Made by a program: the position numbers and the translations under genes. Under the pieces are notes generated by a model. That model saw only the letters and a program-made list of their open reading frames with translations. It was not told the DNA's origin and ran no database searches. Shown here in pieces: positions 1 through 32,070 of a stretch of 64,000 nucleotides of DNA. How positions within the stretch are numbered: the first letter of the stretch is position 1; every line of letters starts with the position of its first letter. Source of the stretch: Macrostomum hystrix (lineage: Eukaryota > Animalia > Platyhelminthes); the NCBI GenBank assembly GCA_950097015.1, contig CATNEN010000002.1, forward strand, positions 6,200,001 to 6,264,000, written 5' to 3'.

Positions 1-7
1 TTTCCAG

Positions 8-3000
8 CATCAATATGACGGACATCCTGCCCAGCCACTCCATCACTGGTGGAGTGTTTTCTCCGCTGACTTTGTTTGAGTCCACCATCACCAATGCCCA
101 GATGCTGGTTGAGTCCATGGCTGAGCGTGAGCTGTTCTCAGCTCTGCGCATCATCGGCAGCCTCCACAGTCACGTGGTACACGTCATGGAGCCCCGCTAC
201 GGCCGGCTGTGCGAGCGAAGCGACCACCTCGCCGAGCTGGAAGCCTCCGGCATGGCCCAGACTGCCGCAGCCGCTGCTGAAGCGGCCGCTTCGTCTGCCA
301 CTGTTAGCGGCGCCAGGCGTGTTGCTAAGGAGGAGAAGATCATGTCCAATTCACCACTGGCTGCTCAGCAGTCTTCTGTGCTCCACTCGGCACTGGGCAC
401 CATAAAGGTTTGTTTGAGCTCACGCTTAGCATCTGAAGCAAATGTACACGTTTTTAGGCCATTTTCAATATTAGATTACTAATTTCTTGAGTAATTTATT
501 AAATAATTAGAGGCTAGGCTAAACTCTTCTCCCCCACAACAACAGATGGAGAACTTTGAGTCGGCGGCGGCAGACTACGGTGAGCAGCACCTGCTGGAGG
601 AGCCACCAACGGAGATCCTTGAAGAAGACGCCGACGATGAGATTGACGACGAAGATGATTGTGTCATCACCGACTATTTCGACGACAGCAGCTTCGGTGG
701 CGGCGGGGTCGGCGGAATTGGAGGCTTCGGCCCGACCCCGTCCAAGATGCCGCGCTACGGCGGCGGTGGCGGAGGTGGCGGCGACAGTTCGATGCCCGCC
801 GAGTGCAAGACCATCATGAGAAGAGCTTACAAGGCGTTGAAAGGGAATGGGCCGCATCTGTTTGACTTTAGCCTGCCGTGAGTTGCACTGAGTTTTAGTT
901 TAACAATTCCTAGAATTCCGGTTAAATTGGGTTTTTCTTAGATTTGAGTGATGGAGTGGGATTTTAAGGACTGTGATGTTTTGGTTTTGAGTAAAGCAGT
1001 AGCATTTAGGTTAAGGAGTTGTTTGTGGGATTTGGGTTAAGGACTGGGATTTTTATGCTAGTGGGATTTCTAGAGAACTTTTATTAATGAGTCTGGGACT
1101 TATTCAGTTTTTAGTGAAATAAGTGTGACTTATTCGGATTTGTGGATAAAGAGTTGGATTTTGGCCACTGGGTTGAGTTGCTATAAATTTTTGGTCATGT
1201 AGTGGAAATTTAAAGGCTATTTGATTGAGAATTCAAGTAATGATTTTTAGGTAAAATTCGAGAACTATATTTAATCTAGAATAATGTAGACTTCTTAACT
1301 TGCTAGTGGACATTTCCATCATGAAGATAGGCATTGCCTAGCGCTTAGAAACAATCTGACTCTGTATTCCCGCTGTGCACCTGCCCCCAGTTTCTCCTCG
1401 GATCAGAACCAACGCGTTGCCGCACGAGTGACCGCAAAGGCCAAGGAGATGGCCCACGGCAAGGGCTGGCCTGAAGACATCTGGCAGAGTGAGTGGGCAG
1501 GTCTTTCCTCTGATATTTCTTTCATTCACCTTGAAAATAAGTTGCATTGACCAGTGTATTATGGGATCTGAGATATTTAAAACAGTCGGACAGACTGTAG
1601 AAATATTAATAGCACACAACGCAGTAGCAGCTTCCAAGAAGGCTGTGTCCTGCTGTCCATGGACTGTAGGGTAGGGATGGTCGCCAATCAAACCTAAATT
1701 TCCCCACCATTTGTTAATGGGCACCAATTTAGTTCCTTGAGAATGATGATTCAAACTACCGACAAAATTATAAGTCTATAATTTAGGAGTGTCGACATTT
1801 TATGTACTACTTAGGAATTTAGTAGTAATTGCTGTATTTGCTATTTTTTTATTATCTATCTGTGTATTTTTGCTTCCATACAAATTTTGTCAAGTCTGGA
1901 AACGTCGCAAGTGAAATGTGGATGTCTGAGATTACAAATCAAATAAAAAAAGCTGATAATTTACAATTCAGCAAATGCTTCACTATGCATTAATTAACTA
2001 ATTAAACTGCATTTTTTTCTTACTGTGGAATGAAATTTTCCCTAAATTTGTATCCCAAGACTTTTTTACTCTGTTTTTAGCACAACAGCCTGCCCCTTGA
2101 ACTGCTGGCGTTTCAGGTAGCGACGTTTCTAGGAAGCTCAGTAAGGATTTGAGTTGATCTAGTCAACAATAGATAAACCAATTGTTCTAGGACTACCCTA
2201 TGGCTCGCGAACTGTCTATGTGTACTTGGATTTCCGGCAGAAGATGCGAATCCGACATCGAGTTGTAGTAAGCCAATAGTGTCCTTAAATGCAGTTTTAT
2301 AGCGGGCGTGAGTCTCCTAGTTGCATTGTTGCATTTCCACACCGATCAATAATGTGCTTGCGATGTTTACCAATTAACACTGTGCTGTAGTTTGTGGTTC
2401 GGCACAATCTGTCATGCCTATTTAACTTAATTCCGCCTAATAATTGATTAATGCTTGAAGGACTGCCCAAAGATGCCAGGGTGAATCGCATTCACTGCAC
2501 CCTGGCTGCTGGCCTCCGCTTCAAGCACAAGCAGATTGTGAGTTTCAAGCTTGCCCAGTTACTATCATTGGCGTTGTGCTTTGATCATTTAAGCAGCAGC
2601 AATGCGTTGAGCACATTCTAATCACTTATTCGACGTTTCCTGAGTATGCCTAAATAGCTTGAAAACCTGAAATCCCAGGAATTCTGAGCATCCTCGCATT
2701 TGCCCACACACCCCTAATCTCCCCCGGAACTGTTTTCTAGAACTGCCAAAAGTTGGCCGACTGTCTGAGATTTTCTTTGTATTCCGAAGCCAGATTCGAA
2801 ACAAGCTGCGGGTGTTTGTAAGCCAAGAATGTCGACTGTGATTTTATTTCTCATTGTTTTGTTTGTTGCCAGCGGCGTTTCTCGACTATTGCGGCCTAGC
2901 TAAGAGTTTTAAAATTCACACGCGTACGAAAATTAACCTGATTGTTTTAGAGTTGCCGGCAAGCGGTCGTGTTGGCAAGATGTTCACCGATTTTAGGCAG

Positions 3001-6000
3001 AAGATGCGCGTCAAACTTCAGTTTAATGTGCGTCTGCTGGGCTGTGCAAACAGCAGCTCTTGTTTTTTCTATAGAAAAGTCTGCGACCGCGTTTCCTGAC
3101 TTGAGTTTGCCTGATAAAATACAGTTCATCACTGGGTTTCAAAACTCAAACCCGCTAAAGCAAGTGCATTTATAATTGTCCATTCTAATGCAGGGCTGCC
3201 ATTTGCGGCTCGTCTGGCGTGCGTGTTCAGCAATTTCCGCCACAAAATGCGAAGCAAATGGCGCGCAGATGTTAGTTCGGTCATTGTTGTTTAGGGCCTG
3301 AATGCGGTGAATTATTTTTGAAAGGCTGACGTTTCCTGACTAGACCATTGTCCTCAGTCATTGTTCTGAACATAATCTTGAGGATTGCAGCAGTTTTGTC
3401 TCTTGGCGCCTCTTACAGACCTGCCATTCAATAGCCGGCTGATTCGCATCTTTGGCGACTTTAAAAAGAAGATTCGTTTCAAATGGCGCTCAACAGTTAG
3501 TCTGGGCTCTTGTTGCCGCATAATTAGTTTCTTCTCTAGTCAATTGAAGCAGGCGTAGGGCGGCTGCGGGCCATTCCGCCAAGCTCTGACTGAGCACACG
3601 TGTGCTCGGATACGCTGAGACGGAGCGGTCAACGCGTCCTACCCTAGCACCCAAGATCTCTATAAAAATATTTTTGACTCTTCGGGGGTTTTGTGCAATT
3701 TACGGCCATAGGCAGTGAAGCCAGCGCCTGAATGCTTTGGGGATGACAGATTGGTTGACAGACTAGTCGAAGGTGTCCTGTGGTTGAGCTGCGCCTAATG
3801 GTTAGGCTTGAACAGTGAAATTGGAGAAATTCGCGTCAGGGTGTCCATGGTGGCCTAGTTCCACCTTTTGTAGCTCTTGAAGGTCTAGATAGATAAGAGA
3901 GATAGATCTAGATAAAGGTCGGTGACCGCCGAAGTCGGAGATGATGCAAGCACATTCGGGTGACATGCTGATAAAGTTTAAAGGTCTGGAAAGGCCGCAC
4001 TGAGGCGCAGTGCAAATTCGTGTATAGGAGTGTATGAAATACACTAGCTCTTATGGGAAAAATCGGACCTTCGGCCAGAAACATTGAATATCTCGACTGT
4101 CTGAAGAGCTGGCGACTTGTTTCTTGTTTCAGAAGATGCGCAACAAAAAGTTGGCCCGTGTTCTCGAGTTTCGTGTGCTTGCATTGTTCCGTATGGGTGC
4201 AGCAAAAAACATTGTCGGTCCTACTTGGTAGTTCTACCGTTAACGGTCCGGAAAAAGAGCCTAGGAATGGTCAAGGAATCGGACTGTGGCAAAAATGTTC
4301 TATGGCACAAAATACCAGTAATATTGCTAATGTGAATTGGGGATGTTGGTCTTTACTGGTATCCATAGCTCAACAAGCCCCAACCCTGATCTCCGTATCT
4401 ACGCAGTTTTAATTGGCCTTCAGCCCACTCTTGACGTCACCCACCTACAATCAATCTGTTGATGGTTGCATATTTATTTATTTTTTTTTATTCACTGCAG
4501 ACGTTTTCCGACCCATTCAAAGAACTATCATTGTCCTAAAAATATGTCTATGGCATCAAAGAATTCACCGTTCATATTTGCAGACCTTCCCACTAATAGC
4601 CGACTGCACAGCATATTTGCCGACTTTAGAAAGAAGATGCGAAACAAGTGGCGCGTTGATGTTTGTTTAAACTCGCTTCTGCTGCAATAGAGCATTTGTT
4701 GGAAAACCAGGAGCATTCAAAGAAACAATTTTACGAATCAGGGCAAAGCTAAAAAATTCATGACCTAGTTCTAAAACAGTGACTGAATAATGGCCAAATT
4801 TTAGTACAGTATGACTAAATCAAGATTCAGTCATAGAGCAGCATGACTGAATCTTGACCAAATCATAGTACTGTATGGCTGAATCATGACAAGATTCTAG
4901 AACATTATGAATAAATCATGACCAATGAATAGAACAGTATGACTGCATTATGACCAAATTCTAGTACACTATGACGAAATCATGACCTAATCATAAAACA
5001 GTATGACTGAATCATGACCAAATCATAGAACAGTATGACTGAATCATGACCAAATCATAGAACAGTATGACTGAATCATGACCAAATCATAGAACAGTAT
5101 GACTGAATCATGACCAAATCATAGAACAGTATGACTGAATCATGACCAAATCATAAAACAGTATGACTGAATCATGACCAAATCATAGAACAGTATGACT
5201 GAATCATGACCAAATCATAGTACTGTATGACTGAATCATGACCAAATCATAGAACAGTATGACTGAATCATGACCAAATCATAGAACAGTATGACTGAAT
5301 CATGACCAAATCATAGTACTGTATGACTGAATCATGACAAGATTCTAGAACATTATGAATAAATCATGACCAATGAATAGAACAGTATGACTGCATTATG
5401 ACCAAATTCTAGTACACTATGACGAAATCATGACCTAATCATAAAACAGTATGACTGAATCATGACCAAATCATAGAACAGTATGACTGAATCATGACCA
5501 AATCATAGAACAGTATGACTGAATCATGACCAAATCATAGAACAGTATGACTGAATCATTAACAAGTCGATGAACAGTTTGTCTGAATTGTGAGCAAATC
5601 CAGGAACATCTAAGAATAGTATCACTGAATCATGACCAAATGAACGAAGATCATGACCGAATCAACAAAGATGATGCCCTGATCCAAGACATCAGATCCC
5701 AGGCTAAACCTGGGAAAAACCCTTGGCTTTTGCCTCATCCCACACCCCGCACGCCGTCAACTCCAGAAGCTGAACCGGCGTCAGAAAAGTTTCGAACTCG
5801 TGGCCACCAGCCTGACCTCTGAGGAGCTGGAGAAATTCCGAGTGATCCTCACCAGAGAGTACACCAGCTCAGATGAGGAGTGCGGCTCCGGCGGCACCGA
5901 CCAGCTCCGGGTGCGCGAACTCGCCTGGGAGTCGGACGAGGTCAAACGGTTGAAGCGGCAGCTGGATCAGGTGTACTCAGACAATTGCGCAACAACCAAG

Positions 6001-6123
6001 CAGAAGCAACAGCTGGCCAGGTGCATCCGGGACCCGATGCGGTCCAGGTCGCAACGGCCGCCGCCTGAACACGCGCCCAGCTGGGCTCTGAAGGTGCCGC
6101 AGCAGAGAGGCCAAACCAGCTGA
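8..6123 (+). CDS. C14orf93-like protein, 5'-partial spliced gene containing a mutually exclusive exon cluster
   Basis: Exons: 8-407 (acceptor tttccag at 1-7, ATG at 15, donor gtttgt), 546-877, 1391-1488, one of seven 77-nt exons (2191-4660), and 5767-6123 (stop TGA). All junctions are GT-AG and phase-compatible (0, 2, 1, 0), giving 418 aa from ATG15. The C-terminal motifs FDFSLPFSSDQNQRV, YTSSDEE, LRVRELAWESDEVKRLKRQLD and RPPPEHAPSWAL match my recollection of the C14orf93-like family (S-D/S-E-E acidic motif followed by a W/R-x-S helix ending LD). The family call is from recall, not from a search. Confidence 0.75.
1889..1915 (+). promoter_or_regulatory. Candidate intronic docking site for mutually exclusive splicing (GTCAAGTCTGGAAACGTCGCAAGTGAA)
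   Basis: Single-copy sequence about 400 nt downstream of the constitutive donor at 1489. Its reverse complement (TTCACTTGCGACGTTTCCAGACTTGAC) recurs in degenerate form upstream of all seven variable exons. Confidence 0.8.
2120..2132 (+). promoter_or_regulatory. Selector A (GCGACGTTTCTAG)
   Basis: Forms 13 contiguous pairs (one G-U) with docking-site CUGGAAACGUCGC (1896-1908); lies 59 nt upstream of exon A. Confidence 0.8.
2191..2267 (+). CDS. Mutually exclusive exon A (77 nt): x-LPYGSRTVYVYLDFRQKMRIRHRVV
   Basis: Acceptor ttctag, donor gtaagc; phase 1 to 0; paralogous to exons B-G. Confidence 0.85.
2356..2368 (+). promoter_or_regulatory. Selector B (GCTTGCGATGTTT)
   Basis: Forms 13 pairs (two G-U) with docking-site AAACGUCGCAAGU; lies 93 nt upstream of exon B. 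Confidence 0.75.
2461..2537 (+). CDS. Mutually exclusive exon B (77 nt): x-LPKDARVNRIHCTLAAGLRFKHKQI
   Basis: Acceptor ttgaag, donor gtgagt; phase 1 to 0. The most divergent member, but it keeps L1, P2, R6, R19 and K21. Confidence 0.8.
2622..2643 (+). promoter_or_regulatory. Selector C (TCACTTattCGACGTTTCCtGA)
   Basis: 10-bp plus 6-bp helices with the docking site; lies 98 nt upstream of exon C. Confidence 0.8.
2741..2817 (+). CDS. Mutually exclusive exon C (77 nt): x-LPKVGRLSEIFFVFRSQIRNKLRVF
   Basis: Acceptor ttttctag, donor gtaagc; phase 1 to 0. Confidence 0.85.
2872..2887 (+). promoter_or_regulatory. Selector D (GCGGCGTTTCTCGACT)
   Basis: 15 of 16 positions pair with docking-site AGUCUGGAAACGUCGC (two G-U); lies 64 nt upstream of exon D. 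Confidence 0.8.
2951..3027 (+). CDS. Mutually exclusive exon D (77 nt): x-LPASGRVGKMFTDFRQKMRVKLQFN
   Basis: Acceptor gttttag, donor gtgcgt; phase 1 to 0. Confidence 0.85.
3082..3104 (+). promoter_or_regulatory. Selector E (TGCGAccgCGTTTCCtGACTTGA)
   Basis: 14 of 15 pairs with docking-site UCAAGUCUGGAAACG plus a 5-bp UGCGA/UCGCA helix; lies 90 nt upstream of exon E. Confidence 0.8.
3194..3270 (+). CDS. Mutually exclusive exon E (77 nt): x-LPFAARLACVFSNFRHKMRSKWRAD
   Basis: Acceptor ctaatgcag, donor gttagt; phase 1 to 0. Confidence 0.85.
3328..3345 (+). promoter_or_regulatory. Selector F (GACGTTTCCtGACTaGAC)
   Basis: 16 of 18 positions complementary to docking site 1889-1906; lies 74 nt upstream of exon F. 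Confidence 0.8.
3419..3495 (+). CDS. Mutually exclusive exon F (77 nt): x-LPFNSRLIRIFGDFKKKIRFKWRST
   Basis: Acceptor tcttacag, donor gttagt; phase 1 to 0. Confidence 0.85.
4491..4512 (+). promoter_or_regulatory. Selector G (TTCACTGCAGACGTTTTCCGAC)
   Basis: Gapped match to the docking-site reverse complement TTCACTTGCGACGTTTCCAGAC; lies 72 nt upstream of exon G. Confidence 0.7.
4584..4660 (+). CDS. Mutually exclusive exon G (77 nt): x-LPTNSRLHSIFADFRKKMRNKWRVD
   Basis: Acceptor atttgcag, donor gtttgt; phase 1 to 0. Confidence 0.85.
4760..5640. repeat. Intronic minisatellite, 32-bp unit (ATGACTGAATCATGACCAAATCATAGAACAGT)
   Basis: Directly visible tandem array in the last intron of the C14orf93-like gene. 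Confidence 0.95.
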
Positions 6124-6887
6124 GTTGACTGCTGTGTTGTTAGCTTATTGAATTGCAATCAGACAGCGTCTAGTGTTATTCGGCTATTTGTAAATTGGTT
6201 TTGCTTTTTACGTTTGCCTACGGCTACCTTATAAATCATAATGCCGATCGTTTTTAATTGCCGAACTCATTTCTGGACTATTTCGACTGCGTACGACTCT
6301 TCTCTTTGACCTGTTCACAATAATTGAGTCTCCACAGTCAAGTGAGGTTTTTCAGCTTATTTTTAAACTAAAGATAAGGCCAGCTAAAGATTATTGGTGA
6401 ATGAACTGCTAAGCAGAGAGCGGAAGTTAACTGCTATAGAGAGTATGTAGAGTGGGTATGAACTACTGTAGAGTGTGTATGAACTACTGTAGAGTATGTA
6501 GAGTGGGTATGAACTACTGTAGAGTGGGTATGAACTGCTTTAGAGTGGGTATGGACTACTGTAGAGTGGGTATGAACTACTGTAGAGTGGGTATGAACTA
6601 CTGTAGAGTGGGTATGAACTACTGTAGAGTGGGTATGAACTACTGTAGAGGGGGTATGAACTGCTGTAGAGTGGGTATGAACTACTGTAGAGGGGGTATG
6701 AACTACTGTAGAGGGGGTATGAACTGCTGTAGAGTGGGTATGAACTACTGTAGAGTGGGTATGAACTACTGTAGAGTGGGTATGAACTACTGTAGAGTGG
6801 GTATGAACTGCTGTAGAGTGGGTATGAACTGCTGTAGAGTGGGTATGAACTGCTGTAGAGTGGGTATGAACTGCTGTAGAGTGGGTA

Positions 6888-7114
6888 TAATAATAATAAT
6901 TGAATAATTGATTACACCTGCCCCAATTGGGTCAAATGTGCAGCCGACAGCACAGCCGCAGCTAATGCGCGGCGCATCTGAAGGCTGCGTACAGCTGTTC
7001 AGTCCATGGACTGGGGGGACGCCACACCCACCTTCAATTATCCCAGCTGATGCTAATACCCATTTAACAGCTGGGTGAACTGAAGCAATGTAGAGTTAAG
7101 TGTCTTGCTAAAAG
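6888..7114 (-). mobile_element. 5'-truncated SINE copy 1
   Basis: Reverse complement of the 3' ~225 nt of the full-length SINE at 23035-23347, including the (ATT)n tail. Confidence 0.9.
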
Positions 7115-7268
7115 AGTGGGTATGAACTACTGTAGAGTGGGTATGAACTACTGTAGAGTGGGTATGAACTACTGTAGAGTGGGTATGAACTGCTGTAGAG
7201 TGGGTATGAACTGCTGTAGAGTGGGTATGAACTGCTGTAGAGTGGGTATGAACTGCTGTAGAGTGGGT

Positions 7269-7496
7269 ATAATAATAATAATTGAATAATTGATTACACC
7301 TGCCCCAATTGGGTCAAATGTGCAGCCGACAGCACAGCCGCAGCTAATGCGCGGCGCATCTGAAGGCTGCGTACAGCTGTTCAGTCCATGGACTGGGGGG
7401 ACGCCACACCCACCTTCAATTATCCCAGCTGATGCTAATACCCATTTAACAGCTGGGTGAACTGAAGCAATGCAGAGTTAAGTGTCTTGCTAAAAG
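7269..7496 (-). mobile_element. 5'-truncated SINE copy 2
   Basis: Near-identical to 6888-7114 with the same truncation point; part of a ~380-bp tandem duplication. Confidence 0.9.
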
Positions 7497-9160
7497 AGTG
7501 GGTATGAACTACTGTAGAGTGGGTATGAACTACTGTAGAGTGGGTATGAACTGCTGTAGAGTGGGTATGAACTACTGTAGAGTGGGTATGAACTACTGTA
7601 GAGTGGGTATGAACTGCTGTAGAGTGGGTATGAACTACTGCAGAGTGGGTATGAAGTACTGTAGAGTGGGTATGAACTACTGTAGAGTGGGTATGAACTG
7701 CTGTAGAGTGGGTATGAAGTACTGTAGAGTGGGTATGAACTACTGTAGAGTGGGTATGAACTGCTGTAGAGTGGGTATGAACTACTGCAGAGTGGGTATG
7801 AAGTACTGTAGAGTGGGTATGAACTGCTGTAGAGGGGTATGAACTACTCTAGAGTGTGTATGAAGTACTGTAGAGTGGGTATATACTACTACACATAGAG
7901 AGTGAACAGTTGAAGAGTAGCAGCAAATTAATCTAGCGGGCTCTGGTCTCCTGGCATCTACTAGCTAAAAGCGTAAATTGTTTTACGAGTATATTGCTCA
8001 GCTTGACGAGGACATACATTTCTTGCTTAATTTGCGTCAGAGTTTTGCATTTTGTCAACTAATTAATAGTTTATTCTCCAGCTATAGGTAATAACTACTC
8101 AGTCATCTCGCTTTATTAACTGTTGTGATTCTTTGCGTTCCATTGGACATAGAAGTGCAAGTATTGTGAAGCAATCGTTTATTTAAGTAATTGTTCATGT
8201 TGGGTTACCGGTTACGCGTTTGAATAAGTTGTGTTACTTAATTTGTCTATAAAAATGAATTTAACAGTAACTTTGAGTTCCAAAATATACTGGAATATAT
8301 TTTGGGTCGGGTCGCATTGTTCATCATCGAAACCGAAACGAAACTTGTAAAAGTATTTTAATCTGAGTTCTCTCTGCTAAAACGATATTGTTGTAGCGAT
8401 ACGCTCGTATCCTGCGTTCCGTGAAAGTCCTGATAGTCAGCATAGCCGACCATCGACTATTTTATCCTTGGTGTGTGGTCTTGCTTGACTCCATGAAATC
8501 CGAAGCGAATTTTATGCAGTTCGCATCAGTCTTAAACTCAAGAACTACTCAAGAATTGTTTTATTCCTTACACGGACGGGTGGGCAGCTAATCGTCTATG
8601 ATAATCTGAGAGATTGTGACAAACTGAACACAAACATTTCAATAAACTGAACACTTTGAAAACGAGTTTTGATAAAATTCTAACAAAAACAATTAAGCTG
8701 AAGTTTTGGAATGCAGAATGCATTTCCTCGAAAATTACTATTTTTTTTACTCGATTCGCTATTTCTGTGAGTTTTTGCTACCAAATACGTTTGTATGACC
8801 GCCATGAGACTATGGCTATGAGCTCTGTCACTATGAGAGCTGCTTCACAGCAGAGCAAACAAATCTGGCTGGCTGGCATGTTTGCCCATCTTCGCAATTA
8901 GGTAAAAATAGAGTCGCATGTTTAAATAAACAAATACTTTTCTTAACCTGCGGCTCAAGCTACTGAGGCAGTCAATGTTGAGTATAATCTTTGTTTAACA
9001 CAATGGGCAAACACACCAGATTTAACGCGTTGTCATGGCAACAGAAAACAAAGGCTATGCAGCACGCTGAGAATGTTTTTAAACTGAAATTTCGAGATTG
9101 ACGGCGGGCCAGGAGAGCTCAGTGTTTCACCCCTGCCTGACCGAGTCTGACTGCTCAGAC

Positions 9161-10292
9161 ATGCCGATCTCATCAGGCGCTGGCGGCAAGCCTAACTCCT
9201 ACTTCAACCCGACCAATGCCGTGTCACGGAGGCCATCCGTCAGCAGCGGCAACTACAGCGGCTCCAGTGCCGGGGCCACTCCCGGCTACTACTATGGCAG
9301 CTACGGCGGCGCCGAGCCCGTTGTCATGGCAACCGTTGCCGGGGCCGCCGCCACACCACGAGGAGTTCAGGTTGGATTTCTTGTCACGATCACGAAAACC
9401 CGGAAACCCTGAAAGTCAGGAAACGCCAGCGACAACTAACACTGACACTCCAGTCTCCATCCCTGACACTCCAGTCTCCATCCCTGACACACCGATCTCC
9501 ATCCCTGACACTCCAATCTCCAACCCTGACACTCCAATCTCCATCCCTGACACACCGATCTCCAACCCTGACACTCCAATCTCCATCCCTGACACTCCAA
9601 TCTCCATCCCTGACACTCCAATCTCCATCCCTGACACTCCAATCTCCATCCCTGACACTCCAATCTCCATCCCTGACACTCCAATCTCCATCCCTGAAAC
9701 TCCAGTCTCTAACCCTGAAACTCCAGTCTCTAACCCTGACACACCTGCAAACTCTCAGGTGGTTGACATATCCGGCCGGATGCCCCAGAACAGCCAAGCC
9801 GCGGTGTCTCGTGAGTCGCCCGACCGTCGCTGCTGTCCGTGTCCGGGCCGCGGCCGCCCGGAGATGCGCATGCCGCCGATGCCGAAGAGCAAGCTGGCCA
9901 CAGCCGGCGGTGCCGTCACCCGCCACGGCTGCTGCGTCTTCCTAATCGGCCTGCTGGCCCTAGCCACGGCTGCCGGCCTCATCGCCGGCCTGTACTTCCT
10001 GTGCACCCAGTTGTCCGGAGTCCGAGCTGCCAGGGGCGCCTTCTACCTGATTCCCGGGAGGCGAGCCGGCGACCTCATGTGGGTCATCTACGGCACCCTG
10101 CAGGAGTGCCAGCCTGTCACCACCAGTGCATCGACCACAAGCACCACAACGTCAACAACCACCACAGTTTCCACCACGAGGGCAACCGGCACTACGGCGT
10201 CGACAACTACGCCGACTACGACTACGACCGCAGCCACAACCTCGGGGACCACATTGATCTCCTGCGCCAGCACCACATATCGGTATCAGCAG
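9161..10292 (+). CDS. Orphan type II single-pass membrane protein with Thr-rich (mucin-like) stalk; 3' end unresolved
   Basis: Exons 9161-9370 (ATG; donor gttgga) and 9759-10292 (acceptor ctctcag; donor gtgagc), phase 0/0. The hydrophobic segment CCVFLIGLLALATAAGLIAGLYFLC is followed by a T-rich run. Confidence 0.65.
9440..9740. repeat. Intronic minisatellite, 21-bp unit (CCCTGACACTCCAATCTCCAT)
   Basis: Fills intron 9371-9758; source of the PISIPDT pseudo-peptide. Confidence 0.95.
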
Positions 10293-11699
10293 GTGAGCAC
10301 AATCACCTTTAAGGGTGCTATCAAAGACCACTTAAGAAGATGATACTATTGGAGACGGAGGGTGAGTGGCAGAGCGGTTAGGGCGTTTGCCTCTCTCACC
10401 AAGGTCCCTGAGAGTCACTCACTCAACAATGAGCCATTGCCCGCAGCCCTGCTGCCATTGTCATTATTACTATTGAAAACTACTCGGGTTCAATTTCTGT
10501 AAGCATAAACTACTTGTTGATCGTGTATGGTAGCTTCGATATTAACGATACATTAAACAGGTTTTATAGATTAAACTGCAATTGTCTATGGTTCCCGAAT
10601 TGAGCGCTAGTTTAAAAAATCTCATTTCCGCCGTTTTTTCCCATAGACTGCGTCTCTCTCCCTTAAGAAGCGTGCAGCCATTTGACCCTCCAGCTCAGTC
10701 TGTCTGCTTCTCAGATATATCTATGGTCTAAGTCTTTGTGTCGTGTACAATCCAAGGGAGTCCTATGAAAGCAACAGACTTCAACTCGGTGGTGATTAGT
10801 TTTTAGCTCTTATTCTGTAGAGTTAGCATCACATTTAACACACTTGCAACTGACACCTTTGAGTTTTTTGTACTTTGCACCCTTCAACTTGTAACCCACC
10901 GGTCGCAGGTGACATTGTCAGTCGGCAGGACTCGGCCGGAACCGATCTTCGTAGCAGCCTCCGCGGCGGCTGCCCTACTCTGCCGGCTGCTGTTGATGAC
11001 GCAACAGGTCACGTGATGTGCTAGAGTTAAAACAACGCATTAATTTTATTGCATACATCCATTCTTTATTTTCGTAAGTTATTTACTATATTAATCTTAT
11101 TTCTAATTTTAATTTATAATGTTTTACAGAAACATTTTTGTTATAAATATAATGGACGGGTATAATTAGAAATTATATGTTTAAATAATAAAAATTTAAT
11201 GGCTAACGAAATGATAATCTCTATAACTCTTAATATTTCTTTAAACCAATTTATTTTTTTGTCGTTTAAAAGTACTAAAAAGTTTTCTTTAGTGCCATCT
11301 ATACGTAGTAGACCCTTGTACCTAGACGCAAGCCAATTGCTAGTTTCTGTTAGCTTAGAAACTGTTTCTTTGCTCTGTAAACTTCGTCTTATTGTTATAA
11401 TTTTTAAGACAAGTAAAATTATTTTGCTGTGTAAAAAACTGTACAGTTACTGTCGTCGTTTAGCGGTAGTTGACAATACTATTTTTCGATTTCAATGATG
11501 ACGTAGCTGCGTTGTCTTAAAAGCATGCTTTTTTAAGTCTCGCTTAAGGTTTCTACCTGTCTGCCACTAAATAAATAAGAACAATGCGTCTTTAACTTGT
11601 GTTGTATTTGCAGTGTAACTTCTTTATCAAACCAGAGCTCAAAGGCCCGCCTTAAGAAATCAAAAACTTGCATAGCTGCCCAAACACTGCCTAAACACT

Positions 11700-12296: not shown

Positions 12297-14283
12297 CATT
12301 CACAGCTTATCTCGTAGTTGCTTTAATGCTTCAACATAGAATCAAACGGAGCAAAGCAAAAATTAAGGATTAGAAGTTACGCGCCATTTTACTCAGGTGC
12401 GTAACTGGTATAGACAGGAAGTCAAACAGTACACCTGACAGTAGAAGACAGGTATAGACCTCTCTGGGTTATCTATACTGGTTCAATAAACATATTAAAA
12501 ATACAATCAATACGCGGTTGTGTGCAAACTCGATCCCAAGTCCTTGGAGAGTAATTTTACTCTTTGATCCCCCATTACTTACGAGTACCAGTTTCCCCCA
12601 TAGAATCGTCAGTGAGCCTTGAGGCCAGCTTGGGTGGTTCGTAGCACGTGACTCGATGAGTCATCGCCTTGATCTCTCGGACCCCTCAAAACGCCCACCC
12701 CACCTCCGCTTTGCATTGACGGGAGCTTAGCCTTCAAATGTCCTGTTAATTTACGCGAATCCCTTCATATTTTTCCCGACTTTAATAAGAATTATAAGAA
12801 TCCCTATCCCTAACAAGCTCGTATATTAATTCCCCATCCCCCCCGAGTCGTCACGGCAAGCCTTCACCCCTGAAGAGCAACGACAGTCGTCCTTGCGCCC
12901 AGCCGCCTGACCCTGCAGTACAGCCGAGTCCAGCTGCATCTGGTTGAGCCCAAGTTAAATTAATACCGTCAGTAGCATCAAGGTATTTGCTATTTTGCTT
13001 TTGACCACATCAGGCAGGAAAATTTCTTGCAGACTAAATAATAGAAGGTAATGTGATAATCTAATTCTAATATAAAAACGGTACGATAGTACTAATAGCA
13101 GTACAGTTTGCACACAGCCGCATTCAGGAGAGGCTAGGCTTTCACTAGGCGGCACAGACCTTGTAAGAAGGGATTGAAACTCTGTATTGAAACTTTAGCG
13201 AATGCCTCATCCCCAGCTAAGGTAGGATTGTGTAAAGTACAAAAGAACCCCCTATGCGAAAGACCTTGCTTCTAGCACTGACAAGAACACCCAGTAGATG
13301 CCCAGCATGCAGTACCATTTAGCAGCCATTATCGTCTCTCTTTGGCCTAAATATTAGTCGTAGCAACCGAGGCCCCGGCCTCGTTAGGATTTATTTATGG
13401 AGTCCAGAACCGCACGTGGTGGTGGCAGATCGGCAGACCTTGGCCAATCGGACACACAAAACCAGCTACCAACCATCAGTAAGACTGGTGCCACTTGGGG
13501 GAGTAAGGCCTGATCCCTTCCACCTTGGGATCCCCTCATGCATCATGGGATTTCCAACGCTGGCACGGAGCCATCCCCGGGTTTCAGCACAATATAAAAA
13601 ATGTATATTATATACGTTGACATAACGAAACTTTGTGAGCAGAAAATTATGGTTTTTGCCATCAGACACCCCGACGAGAATCGTTGAATATCTCGAACAT
13701 GCCGATTTTGGCAATTCTGGAAATTGTTTCAGTGGATGGAGTGGTAAATTGTAGCCAGTGTTCCGGATTTTCATGACTATTGGTAGAATATTTTGGGAGA
13801 TGCAAAAAAGAAAGAAAAAAGTTAAATACCCACGGCGCTTTTCTACCGGTAAGGCAAGCAAAACAATTGACCAAACAAAAGCATAGTCAAGAGAACCACC
13901 AATGAACCGATAAAACAGAAATCAGGTTTTGCAAAAAAAATTTGAGGTAGACCGAGTGCATCCCGAGAAAAAACTTGGAATCAGAAATTTTACTTACTGT
14001 TGAATAAAATAAGAGCATAGAAAATAAAAGAGCTGGTTGCAAAAAATGGCTCATTGTTTGACCGTCTGTGACAATAATAACCTATACGAGCTAAGTCGAA
14101 AGCAGTCTGAGAGCAGTTTTTATCAAGCTATTCAATAATTCGTTTTTTAAATAGCGTCTTCCTTTGATCCATAAATAATTTGCCGCTTTGACTAGCCGCC
14201 ATAAATGGTCTTTCAAATCTTGCTAGACTAGTTTAAATAGCTGGAATAGATGCGAACTGAGCAGCAATCTTTGACTTGCCATT

Positions 14284-16670: not shown

Positions 16671-17549
16671 AAGGGTCCCTAAGTTAGCAAAAGCTGTCTC
16701 ACAGCTTCAACAAAATGTTTTTAAAGACATAACAATGCCCAACTGTGTAAACTGGGTTGTAGCATTAGTATTCTTGGCAATTTCATATAAAACTTTACAA
16801 TCAAAGCCATCTTGAGGCGAGAAAAATAGTATCTATTTACATTTGCATGCACAGAAAGTACATTTCGCAGGTAAAAGTACAAAAAAGAATTATCAGTCAA
16901 ACAAGTGTCAATTAAAACTTTGATGGCGCCTAAGAAATAATACAAATAACACTTTAAAAAAATAGACAAGCACCACCCGATATGTATTGATATTGTTTTA
17001 GGAGAAAAGTTGTTACACACCCTTGCCAATGTTATGCGGGATAATATTGAGCTTGCATTAGCCTGTCCGTTGGCTAGAGGAAAAATAAAAGTACATGCAA
17101 AAAGCCAAGCTCGCCAGATAGTCCGTGATAGGTCAAATTGTTGAAGGTGAATTATGGGTAACGGGTGAGAGTTGAAGTCGCTGCTAGTGCTGCATGTGTC
17201 AAGAATGAGTAAAATCAATTAGCAAAGAAGCGATACTTGCTAAATACTGTCACTTCATTTTTTACTGATATATTGATTGATTGATTGACAGGTCGCAATA
17301 AAATAGAATACAAAAGTTGTCGGAAAATAGGCACCTGAAATAGGCAACAGATTGACAAAAACTTAATATAATTTTATAATATAAAAATGCTTAACAAAAA
17401 GTAAAAAACTTGAAATGATGCCTTACAGACGCTTGAACAAACATTGACAAATTGACATAAAAATAATGATAAAATAGTACAGATGTATACAGGAACACGT
17501 AAGCATACAAAATTGTGTTCTCACAGCTTCATGAGTTAAGTCTAGGGTG

Positions 17550-18060
17550 CGGGAGTGGGGTGGCTGCGATTGTCGGCTTGGGGAGTGAGGTGGGTGTGAT
17601 TGTCAGTTGGAGGAGTGGGGTTGGTGCGGTTTTCCTTGGTGGAGTGGGGTGGCTGCGATTGTCGGCTTGGGGAGTGAGGTGGGTGTGATTGTCAGTTGGG
17701 GGAGTGGGGTTGGTGCGGTTTTCCTTGGGGGAGTGGGGTGGCTGTGATTGTCGGCTTGGGGAGTGAGGTGGGTGTGATTGTCAGTTGGGGGAGTGGGGTT
17801 GGTGCGGTTTTCCTTGGTGGAGTGGGGTGGCTGCGATTGTCGGCTTGGGGAGTGAGGTGGGTGTGATTGTCAGTTGGGGGAGTGGGGTTGGTGCGGTTTT
17901 CCTTGGGGGAGTGGGGTGGCTGTGATTGTCGGCTTGGGGAGTGAGGTGGGTGTGATTGTCAGTTGGAGGAGTGGGGTTGGTGCGGTTTTCCTTGGGGGAG
18001 TGGGGTGGCTGTGATTGTCGGCTTTGGGAGTGAGGTGGGTGTGATTGTCAGTTGCGGGAA
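17550..18060. repeat. G-rich tandem repeat, ~90-bp unit made of three ~30-bp subunits
   Basis: Directly visible, about 5.5 copies, downstream of the PTEN stop. Confidence 0.9.
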
Positions 18061-18308
18061 TAGGGTTGTGGAGTGGGTGTGATTGCGATATTCTGCTTGG
18101 GTAGTGGGGGTTCAGTTCCATAAACTGGCGGTGAGAACTTACAGACCGCAGACATCTGCATGCAAGGCATGGAGAAATGGCAAATTTAAGAAAACTGTAG
18201 TGACTTAAAGCTAAAGGAATTGAGAGTATGATTAAAAGAGATTGTTCCAAACGGAAAAGCCATTCCTGGAATCGCTAGTTTTGGCCAGCTGTACTAACCA
18301 ATCAGCAA

Positions 18309-27364: not shown

Positions 27365-30300
27365 AATGAGAGATGAGACATGCGAAATGTGAGACTGGGG
27401 AGAGATGAGACAAACGAACTATGAGACTGGGGAGAGATGATACAAAGGAGAGATGAGACAGGGGAGAGATGAGACAGAGGAGAGATGAGACAGAGGAGAG
27501 ATGAGGCAGAAAAGAGATGAGACAGAGGAGAGATGAGACAGAGGAGAGATGAGACAGAGGAGAGATGAGGCAGAAAAGAGATGAGACAGAGGAGAGATGA
27601 GGCAGAGGAGAGATGAGGCAGAGGAGAGATGAGACAGAGGAGAGATGAGACAGAGGAGAGATGAGACAGAGGAGAGATGAGACAGAGGAGAGATGAGGCA
27701 GAGGAGAGATGAGACAGAGGAGAGATGAGACAGAGGAGAGATGAGACAGAGGAGTGATGAGACAGAGGAGAGATGAGACAGAGGAGAGATGAGACAGAGG
27801 AGAGATGAGACAGAGGAGAGATGAGACAGAGGAGTGATGAGACAGAGGAGAGATGAGACAGAGGAGAGATGAGACAGAGGAGAGATGAGACAGAGGAGAG
27901 ATGAGACAGGGGAGAGATGAGGCAGAGGAGAGATGAGACAGAGGAGAGATGAGGCAGAGGAGAGATGAGGCAGAGGAGAGATGAGGCAGAGGAGAGATGA
28001 GACAGAGGAGAGATGAGGCAGAGGAGTGATGAGACAGAGGAGAGATGAGGCAGAGGAGAGATGAGACAGAGGAGAGATGAGGCAGAGGAGAGATGAGACA
28101 GGGGAGAGATGAGGCAGAGGAGAGATGAGACAGAGGAGAGATGAGACAGAGGAGAGATGAGACAGAGGAGAGATGAGACAGGGGAGAGATGAGACAGAGG
28201 AGAGATGAGACAGAGGAGAGATGAGACAGAGGAGAGATGAGACAGGGGAGAGATGAGGCAGAGGAGAGATGAGGCAGAGGAGAGATGAGACAGAGGAGTG
28301 ATGAGACAGAGGAGAGATGAGACAGAGGAGAGATGAGACAGGGGAGAGATGAGACAGAGGAGAGATGAGACAGGGGAGAGATGAGACAGAGGAGAGATGA
28401 GACAGAGGAGAGATGAGACAGAGGAGAGATGAGACAGAGGAGAGATGAGGCAGAGGAGAGATGAGACAGAGGAGAGATGAGACAGAGGAGAGATGAGACA
28501 GAGGAGAGATGAGACAGAGGAGAGATGAGACAGAGGAGAGATGAGACAGAGGAGAGATGAGACAGAGGAGAGATGAGACAGGGGAGAGATGAGACAGAGG
28601 AGAGATGAGACAGAGGAGAGATGAGACAGAGGAGAGATGAGACAGGGGAGAGATGAGGCAGAGGAGAGATGAGGCAGAGGAGAGATGAGACAGAGGAGTG
28701 ATGAGACAGAGGAGTGATGAGACAGAGGAGAGATGAGACAGAGGAGAGATGAGACAGAGGAGAGATGAGACAGGGGAGAGATGAGACAGAGGAGAGATGA
28801 GACAGAGGAGAGATGAGACAGAGGAGAGATGAGACAGGGGAGAGATGAGGCAGAGGAGAGATGAGGCAGAGGAGAGATGAGACAGAGGAGAGATGAGACA
28901 GGGGAGAGATGAGACAGAGGAGAGATGAGGCAGGGGAGAGATGAGGCAGGGGAGAGATGAGACAGAGGAGAGATGAGACAGGGGAGAGATGAGGCAGGGG
29001 AGAGATGAGACAGAGGAGAGATGAGACAGGGGAGAGATGAGACAGAGGAGAGATGAGACAGGGGAGAGATGAGGCAGGGGAGAGATGAGACAGAGGAGAG
29101 ATGAGACAGGGGAGAGATGAGACAGAGGAGAGATGAGACAGGGGAGAGATGAGACAGGGGAGAGATGAGGCAGGGGAGAGATGAGACAGAGGAGAGATGA
29201 GACAGGGGAGAGATGAGACAGAGGAGAGATGAGACAGAGGAGAGATGAGGCAGAGGAGAGATGAGGCAGAGGAGAGATGAGACAGAGGAGAGATGAGACA
29301 GAGGAGAGATGAGACAGAGGAGAGATGAGACAGAGGAGAGATGAGACAGGGGAGAGATGAGGCAGAGGAGAGATGAGACAGAGGAGAGATGAGACAGAGG
29401 AGAGATGAGACAGAGGAGAGATGAGACAGAGGAGAGATGAGACAGAGGAGAGATGAGACAGAGGAGTGATGAGACAGAGGAGAGATGAGACAGAGGAGTG
29501 ATGAGACAGAGGAGAGATGAGACAGAGGAGAGATGAGACAGAGGAGAGATGAGACAGAGGAGAGATGAGACAGAGGAGTGATGAGACAGAGGAGAGATGA
29601 GACAGAGGAGAGATGAGACAGAGGAGAGATGAGACAGAGGAGAGATGAGACAGAGGAGTGATGAGACAGAGGAGAGATGAGACAGAGGAGAGATGAGACA
29701 GAGGAGAGATGAGACAGAGGAGAGATGAGGCAGAGGAGAGATGAGACAGAGGAGAGATGAGACAGGAGAGATGAGACAGAGGAGAGATGAGACAGAGGAG
29801 AGATGAGACAGAGGAGAGATGAGGCAGAAAAGAGATGAGACAGAGGAGAGATGAGGCAGAGGAGAGATGAGGCAGAGGAGAGATGAGGCAGAGGAGAGAT
29901 GAGACAGAGGAGAGATGAGGCAGAGGAGAGATGAGACAGAGGAGAGATGAGGCAGAGGAGAGATGAGACAGAGGAGAGATGAGGCAGAGGAGAGATGAGA
30001 CAGGGGAGAGATGAGGCAGAGGAGAGATGAGACAGAGGAGAGATGAGACAGAGGAGAGATGAGACAGAGGAGAGATGAGACAGGGGAGAGATGAGACAGA
30101 GGAGAGATGAGACAGAGGAGAGATGAGACAGAGGAGAGATGAGACAGGGGAGAGATGAGGCAGAGGAGAGATGAGGCAGAGGAGAGATGAGACAGAGGAG
30201 TGATGAGACAGAGGAGAGATGAGACAGAGGAGAGATGAGACAGGGGAGAGATGAGACAGAGGAGAGATGAGACAGGGGAGAGATGAGACAGAGGAGAGAT

Positions 30301-31770
30301 GAGACAGAGGAGAGATGAGACAGGGGAGAGATGAGACAGAGGAGAGATGAGACAGAGGAGAGATGAGACAGAGGAGAGATGAGACAGGGGAGAGATGAGG
30401 CAGAGGAGAGATGAGGCAGAGGAGAGATGAGACAGAGGAGTGATGAGACAGAGGAGTGATGAGACAGAGGAGAGATGAGACAGAGGAGAGATGAGACAGA
30501 GGAGAGATGAGACAGGGGGAGAGATGAGACAGAGGAGAGATGAGACAGAGGAGAGATGAGACAGAGGAGAGATGAGACAGGGGAGAGATGAGGCAGAGGA
30601 GAGATGAGGCAGAGGAGAGATGAGACAGAGGAGAGATGAGACAGGGGAGAGATGAGACAGAGGAGAGATGAGGCAGGGGAGAGATGAGGCAGGGGAGAGA
30701 TGAGACAGAGGAGAGATGAGACAGGGGAGAGATGAGGCAGGGGAGAGATGAGACAGAGGAGAGATGAGACAGAGGAGAGATGAGACAGAGGAGAGATGAG
30801 ACAGAGGAGTGATGAGACAGAGGAGAGATGAGACAGAGGAGAGATGAGACAGAGGAGAGATGAGACAGAGGAGAGATGAGACAGAGGAGTGATGAGACAG
30901 AGGAGAGATGAGACAGAGGAGAGATGAGACAGAGGAGAGATGAGACAGAGGAGAGATGAGACAGAGGAGAGATGAGACAGAGGAGTGATGAGACAGAGGA
31001 GAGATGAGACAGAGGAGAGATGAGACAGAGGAGAGATGAGACAGAGGAGAGATGAGACAGAGGAGAGATGAGACAGAGGAGAGATGAGACAGAGGAGTGA
31101 TGAGACAGAGGAGAGATGAGACAGAGGAGAGATGAGACAGAGGAGAGATGAGACAGAGGAGAGATGAGACAGAGGAGTGATGAGACAGAGGAGAGATGAG
31201 ACAGAGGAGAGATGAGACAGAGGAGAGATGAGACAGAGGAGAGATGAGACAGGGGAGAGATGAGGCAGAGGAGAGATGAGACAGAGGAGAGATGAGACAG
31301 AGGAGAGATGAGACAGAGGAGAGATGAGACAGAGGAGTGATGAGACAGAGGAGAGATGAGACAGAGGAGAGATGAGACAGAGGAGAGATGAGACAGAGGA
31401 GAGATGAGACAGAGGAGAGATGAGACAGAGGAGAGATGAGACAGAGGAGAGATGAGACAGAGGAGTGATGAGACAGAGGAGAGATGAGACAGAGGAGAGA
31501 TGAGACAGAGGAGAGATGAGACAGAGGAGAGATGAGACAGAGGAGTGATGAGACAGAGGAGAGATGAGACAGAGGAGAGATGAGACAGAGGAGAGATGAG
31601 ACAGAGGAGAGATGAGACAGGGGAGAGATGAGGCAGAGGAGAGATGAGACAGAGGAGAGATGAGACAGAGGAGAGATGAGACAGAGGAGAGATGAGACAG
31701 AGGAGAGATGAGACAGAGGAGAGATGAGACAGAGGAGAGATGAGACAGAGGAGAGATGAGACAGAGGAGA
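27365..31770. repeat. Large purine-rich minisatellite, 16-bp unit (GAGACAGAGGAGAGAT), about 4.4 kb
   Basis: Directly visible; the 48-nt (16-aa) period explains the 1492-aa minus-strand ORF. Confidence 0.97.
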
Positions 31771-32070
31771 GATACAGTGCTGTATGAGCAGCGCATCTGT
31801 CCCTGCACTGGATCTCTGGAACTCATTGGGCTATGCAGTTTGTTAAAGGGAATCTATTTACGCATGATATTTTCGTCCCATCTTATTGGCAGCTCATTGC
31901 CATAGACAATTTTTTTTTAGAAATACTTAAATGTCAAAACCAAGTAAAGAAGATAAATTCACAGATTCTATATTACGGTAATATAGAATCTGTGGCTAAA
32001 TTAGCTAAAGCGACTTTTTGTTGTAATTTTCATCAGTAAAGAAAGAAAGGAAAGCATTTTTGCCGTGAAC

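What the first reader, a model, noticed from the sequence alone, without database searches (positions are those of the whole stretch)
1889..4512. Single docking site plus one complementary selector per variable exon (Dscam1-exon-6-like competing RNA structures)
Seen in sequence: a unique 27-nt intronic element (1889-1915, GTCAAGTCTGGAAACGTCGCAAGTGAA) lies between the constitutive exon and the array. About 60-100 nt upstream of every variable exon is a sequence complementary to it: A 2120-2132 (13 bp), B 2356-2368 (13 bp), C 2622-2643 (10+6 bp), D 2872-2887 (15/16), E 3082-3104 (14/15+5), F 3328-3345 (16/18) and G 4491-4512 (gapped). All overlap the GAAACG core, so only one can pair at a time. 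Substitutions in A, B and D are C>T or A>G changes that retain pairing as G-U, a signature of selection on RNA rather than DNA structure. The selectors cover different sub-windows of the docking site while flanking intron DNA is unalignable, which simple duplication would not produce. Established knowledge: this topology (docking site after the upstream constitutive exon, selectors before each variant) governs the Drosophila Dscam1 exon 6 cluster. Inference: an independently evolved instance in an unrelated gene and lineage.
Basis: partly seen in the sequence, partly recalled or inferred. Interest (0 to 1): 0.95.

Follow-up and report, generated by a model that had tools for sequence, protein, structure and literature searches.

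The report
Flatworm exon-choice RNA docking switch
A flatworm (Macrostomum) gene of unknown function has seven interchangeable 77-base exons, and a short intron sequence that can pair with a matching sequence in front of each one; this is the insect Dscam exon-picking design, and I found no report of it in flatworms.

Summary
Window 1889-1915 is a unique intronic element. The gene is an uncharacterised Macrostomum (flatworm) gene with no Pfam, Rfam or PDB fold match.

Three Macrostomum lignano relatives carry the same system:
- a syntenic 7-exon counterpart;
- a 14-exon paralog;
- a 5-exon paralog.

All share an invariant 17-nt docking core, CTGGAAACGTCGCAAGT. It is the only alignable intron sequence apart from a second short AT-rich element. 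In these arrays 28 of 33 exons have a selector. A paralog with a single 77-nt exon has no dock.

Selectors fit their own gene's dock flanks better than the paralogs' (p=4e-4). Their substitutions favour G·U-preserving changes (p=7e-4), which points to selection on the sense-strand RNA.

The best reading is Dscam1-exon-6-type competing RNA pairing, arisen independently. No splicing data exist for this gene.

The scan has flagged paralogous arrays elsewhere in this genome. I found no flatworm report in the searched literature.

The parts
1391..1488 (+). Upstream constitutive exon (exon 3 of the part of the gene seen in the window); ends in phase 1, donor GTGAGT
   Evidence: Translation and splice sites. 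87% aa identity to M. lignano P0135.
1889..1915 (+). Docking site. The invariant 17-nt core CTGGAAACGTCGCAAGT is at 1896-1912. The block 1890-1912 is identical in the syntenic M. lignano locus.
   Evidence: Unique in the window. It is the only intronic blastn match to L001. It is 23/23 identical to L003. All 9-mers and longer shared by the four dock introns lie inside it.
1989..2005 (+). Second conserved intronic element, ATTAATTAnCTAATTAA; role unknown; possibly part of the system
   Evidence: Occurs once per array-bearing locus, always between the dock and the first variable exon, and is absent from the single-exon paralog. No consistent pairing partner was found.
2107..2132 (+). Selector A. 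The core at 2120-2132 pairs with dock 1896-1908. A second helix at 2107-2115 pairs with dock 3' flank.
   Evidence: RNAduplex -32.2 kcal/mol with the 33-nt dock. Ranks in the top 7 peaks.
2191..2267 (+). Variable exon A (77 nt, LPYGSRTVYVYLDFRQKMRIRHRVV)
   Evidence: AG/GT flanks and open frame. 20/25 aa identical to L003 exon 1.
2355..2373 (+). Selector B; pairs with dock 1896-1913, biased to the 3' half, with G.U wobbles
2461..2537 (+). Variable exon B (77 nt)
2621..2643 (+). Selector C (10 bp core plus an AGTGA helix)
2741..2817 (+). Variable exon C (77 nt)
   Evidence: 23/25 aa identical to L003 exon 3.
2865..2888 (+). Selector D
2951..3027 (+). Variable exon D (77 nt)
3081..3105 (+). Selector E; pairs with the 5' half of the dock (GTCAAGTC.GGAAACG) plus TCGCA
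3194..3270 (+). Variable exon E (77 nt)
3324..3346 (+). Selector F; pairs with the 5' half of the dock
3419..3495 (+). Variable exon F (77 nt)
4490..4513 (+). Selector G. It stays about 70 nt upstream of its exon although 1.1 kb has been inserted into that intron.
4584..4660 (+). Variable exon G (77 nt)
5767..6125 (+). Downstream constitutive (last coding) exon, phase 0, with a stop codon at 6123-6125
   Evidence: 85-91% aa identity to M. lignano proteins.

Best explanation
This is a docking-site/selector system with the topology of Dscam1 exon 6.

In the pre-mRNA, one docking sequence (1889-1915) lies about 400 nt downstream of the constitutive exon's 5' splice site. It can pair with only one of seven selectors at a time, because every selector covers the same GGAAACGTCG core. 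Each selector sits 59-98 nt upstream of one 77-nt variable exon.

The duplex loops out all variants upstream of the chosen exon and brings that exon's 3' splice site close to the upstream 5' splice site, so that exon is activated. Once that intron is removed the dock is gone, so the downstream variants cannot be activated. They are skipped when the chosen exon is spliced to the last exon.

Shown here: the elements exist, they are complementary far beyond chance, their footprints on the dock overlap, they have been kept by purifying selection across four paralogous arrays, and the substitution pattern points to the sense RNA.

Inferred: that pairing actually decides exon choice, and that the unpaired variants are kept silent by weak sites or a repressor.
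For: 1. In the window the seven selectors are the seven best duplex partners of the dock. In the M. lignano loci L003, L004 and L001 the top 7, 7 and 4 peaks also all lie 76-145 nt upstream of variable exons, although only 16-28% of each region does.
2. Summed energy is -179 against -116.6 +/- 8.6 for shuffled docks.
3. The 17-nt core is invariant in four genes whose exons are 70-88% identical and whose introns do not otherwise align. Window versus L003 is 23/23.
4. Selectors were found for 7/7, 7/7, 10/14 and 4/5 exons.
5. A paralog with a single 77-nt exon (L005) has no dock.
6. Selectors pair better with their own gene's dock, which differs only in the flanks, than with the paralogs' docks: -24.8 versus -22.7 kcal/mol, Wilcoxon p=3.6e-4, n=32, using fixed 160-nt windows.
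7. Opposite dock G/U, 40 of 216 selector positions carry the wobble-preserving transition. Opposite dock A/C, only 19 of 243 carry the pair-breaking transition (Fisher p=7e-4). The sense strand gives the lower energy for 23 of 32 exons.
8. Exon order is colinear across paralogs, so the array, and with it probably the dock, predates the gene duplications.
9. Transcript-derived M. lignano proteins P0004 and P0112 contain exactly one variable exon, the third of five.
Against: - No RNA data exist for the window's gene. Evidence for one-at-a-time use is limited to a few M. lignano models.
- One transcript-derived model (P0113) skips the whole array.
- The dock core never varies, so there are no classical double compensatory changes in it. 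The flank test and the wobble test use selectors that are related by descent, so they are not independent samples.
- Five exons in the paralogs lack a selector: the first exon of L001, and the first and last three of L004.
- The comparison of the near-identical copies L001 and L002 had no power (1/148 versus 33/1272 differences, p=0.11).
- What silences the downstream variants is unknown.
Confidence: 0.8

Rival explanations
1. Exclusivity is enforced mainly by the reading frame. The exons are 77 nt, so including none or two shifts the frame and such mRNAs are discarded. The dock-selector pairing would only raise splicing efficiency by bringing sites together and would not choose the exon.
For: 77 is not a multiple of 3. 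Skip-all and double-inclusion products run into stop codons. A skip-all product exists among transcript-derived models (P0113).
Against: For skip-all and F+G inclusion the premature stop lies in the last coding exon, where exon-junction-dependent decay would not see it. Frame policing explains neither seven conserved selectors with overlapping footprints nor an invariant dock. Published reasoning says decay alone cannot police clusters of more than three exons (PMC6071210).
Confidence: 0.1
2. The dock and the selector cores are binding sites for proteins, such as a splicing activator on ACGTTTCC near each exon, and their complementarity is incidental.
For: The CGTTTC core is the best conserved part of the selectors. 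A second conserved element with no pairing partner (1989-2005) shows that non-pairing elements do exist here.
Against: Outside the core, selectors differ from one another yet stay complementary to different sub-windows of the dock: B to the 3' half, E and F to the 5' half. They track their own gene's dock flanks. G.U-type changes are favoured.
Confidence: 0.05
3. The selectors are neutral leftovers of tandem duplication, or the inverted repeats act at the DNA level or in an antisense transcript, with no role in sense-strand splicing.
For: The selectors very probably arose by duplication along with the exons (PMC6071210). The shared mismatch opposite dock T1897 in selectors C-G looks inherited.
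Against: The flanking intron is unalignable while the dock is 100% conserved, against about 80% for coding exons. Selectors stay 35-110 nt from their exons despite kilobase insertions. The wobble bias and the sense-over-antisense energies point to sense RNA. The motif is not a dispersed repeat.
Confidence: 0.04

Closest known systems
Drosophila Dscam1 exon 6 cluster (docking site downstream of exon 5, one selector upstream of each of 48 variants)
   Same: The topology is the same. A single dock lies in the intron after the upstream constitutive exon. There is one selector upstream of each variant. All selectors overlap one core, so pairings exclude each other. The dock is far more conserved than the surrounding intron. 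PMC6071210 calls this the 'left docker' variant.
   Different: The gene is unrelated (no Ig/FN3 or any other Pfam domain) and the phylum is different (Platyhelminthes). The arrays are much smaller, 5-14 exons. The dock core is short (17-27 nt). The same dock is shared by at least four paralogous genes. The exons are not a multiple of 3 nt, so frame also penalises errors. No repressor comparable to hrp36 and no locus control region is known here.
Insect 14-3-3zeta, Mhc and MRP1, and Dscam1 exon 4/9 clusters
   Same: Mutually exclusive exons are associated with competing intronic RNA pairings (PMC6071210; PMC4691838 listed).
   Different: In those clusters the dock lies downstream of the array, or the pairing is bidirectional. 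Here it lies upstream. No downstream or second common dock was found.
Human ATE1 exons 7a/7b (competing long-range RNA structures)
   Same: Competing intronic pairings control a mutually exclusive choice outside arthropods (PMC7797038).
   Different: That case has only two exons and five distinct elements. It is not one dock with one selector per exon in a multi-exon array.
Duplication model for the origin of competing structures (Ivanov and Pervouchine 2018)
   Same: The selectors share a core, sit at a fixed distance from homologous exons of equal length, and are colinear across paralogs. This is what partial duplication of an intronic stem-loop together with the exon would produce.
   Different: The single-exon paralog L005 shows no dock-like stem in its 94-nt intron. 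The ancestral stem-loop was therefore not observed.

Membership tests
Dscam1-exon-6-type docking site/selector system | Tandem array of homologous alternative exons of equal length with intact splice sites | tested here: met
   Seven 77-nt exons with AG/GT flanks, open frames and related peptides.
Dscam1-exon-6-type docking site/selector system | A single docking site in the intron between the upstream constitutive exon and the first variant | tested here: met
   The dock at 1889-1915 is unique in the 64-kb window. It holds the same position in L003, L004 and L001.
Dscam1-exon-6-type docking site/selector system | One selector complementary to the dock upstream of each variant, beyond chance | tested here: met
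   7 of 7 exons have one; the top seven duplex peaks are the seven selectors; shuffles and other 27-mers score far weaker.
Dscam1-exon-6-type docking site/selector system | Selector footprints overlap on the dock, so only one can pair at a time | tested here: met
   In the per-position table pooled over the 27 strong selectors of the four arrays, nearly every selector pairs with dock positions GGAAACGTCG. The window's seven pairings are given individually.
Dscam1-exon-6-type docking site/selector system | Dock and selectors conserved in related genes or species while the flanking intron is not | tested here: met
   23/23 identity to the syntenic L003; a 17-nt core invariant in four arrays; the only shared 9-mers and longer. 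Selectors are present at orthologous exons.
Dscam1-exon-6-type docking site/selector system | Covariation that preserves pairing | tested here: inconclusive
   The dock core is invariant, so no double changes occur there. Indirect support comes from own dock flanks beating paralog flanks (p=3.6e-4) and a bias towards wobble-preserving changes (p=7e-4). The samples are related by descent.
Dscam1-exon-6-type docking site/selector system | Exactly one variant per mature mRNA | tested here: inconclusive
   No transcripts exist for the window's gene. M. lignano models P0004, P0112 and P0132 carry one variant, P0113 carries none, and the UniRef models P0001 and P0136 join two, probably through mis-prediction.
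Dscam1-exon-6-type docking site/selector system | Exon choice depends on the pairing (mutation and compensatory rescue) | not testable with these tools
   Needs minigene or transgenic experiments.
Mutual exclusion by steric hindrance (introns too short) | Intron between adjacent variants too short to be spliced | tested here: not met
   The introns between variants are 193, 203, 133, 166, 148 and 1088 nt (coordinates).
Mutual exclusion by U2/U12 spliceosome incompatibility | U12-type donor or branch site on one member of a pair | tested here: not met
   All seven donors are GT with U2-type contexts (GTAAGC, GTGAGT, GTGCGT, GTTAGT, GTTTGT) and all acceptors are AG. There are also more than two exons.
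Mutual exclusion by frame shift plus nonsense-mediated decay | Wrong exon numbers give premature stops well upstream of the last exon junction | tested here: inconclusive
   77 nt shifts the frame, but in the skip-all and F+G products the stop falls in the last coding exon. Only A+B stops inside an internal exon.
C14orf93 / DUF4616-like protein (label used by other readers of this scan) | A match to the Pfam family | tested here: not met
   No Pfam family at E<=1 beyond noise for the window exons or for six full-length relatives. No PDB fold match at E<=1.

The most novel reading that the evidence does not exclude
This is an independent, non-arthropod origin of the one-dock, many-selectors mechanism. 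It has been maintained in at least four paralogous flatworm genes by the same invariant 17-nt dock together with a second conserved AT-rich element (ATTAATTAnCTAATTAA). That element might act as an activator or protein-loading site comparable to the Dscam locus control region. With small arrays of 5-14 exons, short introns and a transgenic host, this would be a much simpler system than Dscam for working out how pairing enforces single-exon choice.
Probability: 0.35. Interest if true: 0.85.

Novelty: new member of a known kind. Interest (0 to 1): 0.75.

Why it matters
In the papers I searched, docking-site/selector control of multi-exon arrays is documented for arthropod genes: Dscam1, Mhc, 14-3-3zeta and MRP1. 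Outside arthropods I found only two-exon competing structures such as human ATE1. Searches that combined the mechanism's terms with flatworm, Macrostomum or lophotrochozoan terms returned nothing relevant.

A clean left-dock system in a flatworm, in an unrelated gene family, would show that this solution evolves repeatedly wherever exons and their intronic stems duplicate. That is what the duplication model predicts.

The family also offers natural replicates. Four arrays of different size share one dock, some exons have lost their selectors, and a single-exon outgroup exists. I recall, without checking it here, that Macrostomum lignano can be made transgenic, which would make selector and dock mutagenesis with compensatory rescue feasible in vivo.

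The variable exon encodes the start of a long basic helix in a protein of unknown function, so the biological purpose of the diversity is also open.

Tried and rejected
- **Pfam.** Searches of the window exons and of six full-length relatives found no family.
- **Rfam.** A search of window 1-7000 found nothing.
- **Fold.** An AlphaFold model of the relative P0132 (mean pLDDT 70.5) had no PDB match at E<=1 in Foldseek.
- **Other copies in the window.** I looked for another copy of the gene or further variable exons and found none.
- **More transcripts.** Protein searches with the last exon, with P0004 and with P0132:150-324 returned only M. lignano genome-derived or UniRef models. No further isoforms turned up. 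P0001 has no genomic record.
- **Shallow-divergence test.** L001 and L002 differ by only about 2.6%, so the test was not significant.
- **Second dock in L004.** A search for a second or downstream dock serving the three selector-less L004 exons found nothing convincing.
- **Partner for the AT-rich element.** No consistent site was found.
- **Ancestral stem.** I looked for a dock/selector stem in the single-exon paralog's 94-nt intron and did not find one.
- **Dispersed repeat or transposon ends.** I rejected this reading because the dock core occurs once per locus.


Full report
**What is in the window**

Window 1-6125 holds the 3' part of a plus-strand, intron-containing gene. There are three constitutive coding exons (ending at 408, 545-878, and 1391-1488). 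Seven tandem 77-nt exons follow: A 2191-2267, B 2461-2537, C 2741-2817, D 2951-3027, E 3194-3270, F 3419-3495 and G 4584-4660. The last coding exon is 5767-6125.

Each variable exon has AG and GT flanks and enters in phase 1. Each encodes a related 25-residue basic peptide of the form LP..R...F..FR.K.R.K. tblastn finds no further copies in the 64-kb window.

**Check of the observation**

Three controls show the complementarity is not chance.

- A sliding RNAduplex scan of the dock against 1930-5766 ranks the seven selectors as the seven best sites. With a 46-nt dock they score -25.4 to -33.2 kcal/mol against a background of -14.0 +/- 4.6. With a 26-nt dock they score -23.3 to -27.4, and the next peak is -19.9.
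- The summed best energy across the seven upstream introns is -179. For 300 shuffled docks it is -116.6 +/- 8.6. The best other 27-mer of the same intron gives -160.5 and is a G-rich stretch.
- The 17-nt core occurs once in the window at up to three mismatches.

Aligning the seven repeat units shows that, apart from the splice sites and the exons, CGTTTC is the only conserved intronic block. Selector A is longer than reported, with a second helix at 2107-2115.

**Whose gene it is**

The last exon is 85-91% identical to Macrostomum lignano proteins. The family is large in that flatworm. It has no Pfam domain, and an AlphaFold model of a relative has no PDB fold match.

In that model the variable exon forms the first part of a long helix, residues 191-224 of P0132.

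Distant relatives of the C-terminal region occur as unnamed proteins in a hemichordate, a sea cucumber and an annelid.

The label 'C14orf93-like' used elsewhere in the scan is not supported by these searches.

**Related loci**

I fetched four M. lignano gene loci, one of them in two near-identical copies.

- **L003** is syntenic with the window, with the same downstream gene. It has seven 77-nt exons in one-to-one order with A-G.
- **L004** has thirteen 77-nt exons plus one of 71 nt.
- **L001**, and its 95% identical copy L002, has five.
- **L005**, a more distant paralog, has one constitutive 77-nt exon in a 94-nt intron context and no dock.

Whether the window is M. lignano itself or a congener cannot be settled. 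Its exons are only 70-88% identical at the DNA level to L003.

**Conservation**

Every array-bearing locus has CTGGAAACGTCGCAAGT in the intron after the constitutive exon.

- Between the window and L001 this 17-mer is the only intronic blastn match.
- Between the window and L003 the match is 23/23, while the neighbouring exons are 71-88% identical.
- Every 9-mer or longer shared by all four dock introns lies inside the core.

Selectors lie 35-110 nt upstream of 7/7, 7/7, 10/14 and 4/5 exons. In each locus the top 7, 7, 7 and 4 duplex peaks all fall upstream of exons. Kilobase insertions and minisatellites have entered several array introns, yet the selectors stay next to their exons.

**RNA-level signatures**

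The docks differ only in their flanks: W ..AAGTGAAATG, L003 ..AAGTAATTTG, L004 ..AAGTTCTTTG and L001 ..AAGTTCTCAC.

With fixed 160-nt windows, selectors pair better with their own dock than with the paralogs' docks: -24.8 versus -22.7 kcal/mol, Wilcoxon p=3.6e-4, n=32. For example, an L001 selector carries GAGAACT opposite AGTTCTC, and an L004 selector carries CCAAAGAA opposite TTCTTTGG.

In ungapped comparison with the invariant core, wobble-preserving transitions opposite dock G/U number 40 of 216. Pair-breaking transitions opposite dock A/C number 19 of 243 (Fisher p=7e-4). The sense strand gives the lower energy for 23 of 32 exons.

These tests are not fully independent, because selectors within an array share ancestry. 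The core itself never varies, so strict compensatory changes cannot be scored.

**Age and origin**

Exon order is colinear across the paralogs. L001 exons 1-5 match L004 exons 1, 4, 5, 6 and 7. Window A, B and C match L004 exons 6, 7 and 10-13. The array, and with it probably the dock, therefore predates the gene duplications.

The selectors most likely arose together with the exons by tandem duplication, as in the published model (PMC6071210).

**Mechanism and rivals**

The best reading is competing dock-selector pairing that activates one exon, as at Dscam1 exon 6.

- Steric and U2/U12 mechanisms do not fit. The introns between variants are 133-1088 nt, and all sites are GT-AG of the U2 type.
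- Frame does help, because 77 nt shifts the frame. But the premature stop after skip-all or F+G inclusion lies in the last coding exon.
- A skip-all product is among the transcript-derived models (P0113).
- Transcript-derived P0004 and P0112 use only the third of five exons.
- No RNA data exist for the window's own gene, so control of exon choice remains an inference.

**Unexplained**

- A second element, ATTAATTAnCTAATTAA, occurs once per array-bearing locus between the dock and the first variant (window 1989-2005). It is absent from L005, and no pairing partner was found.
- Five paralog exons lack selectors.
- Window and L003 selectors C-G keep a U.U or U.C mismatch opposite dock T1897.

**Novelty**

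Literature searches found docking/selector papers for arthropod genes and human ATE1. None concerned flatworms or other lophotrochozoans.

Other agents of this scan have flagged paralogous arrays in the same genome and reached the same reading. I treated those notes as leads. The M. lignano paralogs analysed here are an independent check. This is a new member of a known kind, in a new phylum and a new gene family.

Noticed in passing
window 1989-2005; L003 12016-12032; L004 12635-12651; L001 8506-8522; L002 9199-9215: A second conserved intronic element, ATTAATTAnCTAATTAA (two TAATTA cores), occurs once per array-bearing locus between the dock and the first variable exon. It is absent from the single-exon paralog L005. 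No pairing partner was found. It could be a protein site on the RNA or a homeodomain-type DNA site.
   Followed up: partly
L004 ~12876-12946, 16702-16778, 17902-17978, 18147-18223; L001 9004-9080: Five variable exons in the paralogous arrays have intact splice sites but no detectable selector. They are the first exons of both arrays and the last three of L004. No alternative common docking partner was found.
   Followed up: partly
L001 8858-8866: A sense-strand copy of the dock core (AACGTCGCA) lies about 140 nt upstream of the first variable exon, which has no selector. It may be a second or decoy dock, or a duplication remnant.
   Followed up: no
window selectors C-G (2621-4513) and L003 selectors 3-7: The base opposite dock T1897 is T or C in 10 of 14 selectors, giving a U.U or U.C mismatch flanked by pairs and the motif CCTGAC or CCCGAC, which resembles a branch-point consensus. 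L004 selectors pair at this position.
   Followed up: partly
window 3540-4440 and 4780-5600: There is a 1.1-kb insertion of unknown nature in the F-G intron. A 32-nt minisatellite (25.7 copies) lies in the intron before the last exon. The paralog introns carry their own, unrelated minisatellites.
   Followed up: no
window 6497-64000: The window is unusually dense in minisatellites: 49 TRF rows with score >=200. Examples are a 21-nt repeat directly after the gene (6497-7890), a 16-nt purine-rich repeat of 275 copies (27368-31773) that explains the extreme GC and AT skew there, and a 21-nt repeat of 151 copies (60166-63368).
   Followed up: no
window 9161-10297; L003 19008-19885: The downstream neighbouring gene is conserved in synteny with the M. 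lignano locus L003 (75-78% nt identity). I did not identify it.
   Followed up: no
L001 1-3757; L003 1538-8265; L004 3646-8238: In all three M. lignano loci another member of the same protein family lies immediately upstream in the same orientation, forming a tandem gene pair. Its equivalent region appears to be a single exon without an array. The window starts inside the gene, so this cannot be seen there.
   Followed up: partly
P0113 (M. lignano PAA59491.1): This transcript-derived protein joins the constitutive exon directly to the last exon, skipping the whole array. The result is a frameshifted tail, ...IWQKAQPSPAQLRTGCHQPQH.
   Followed up: partly
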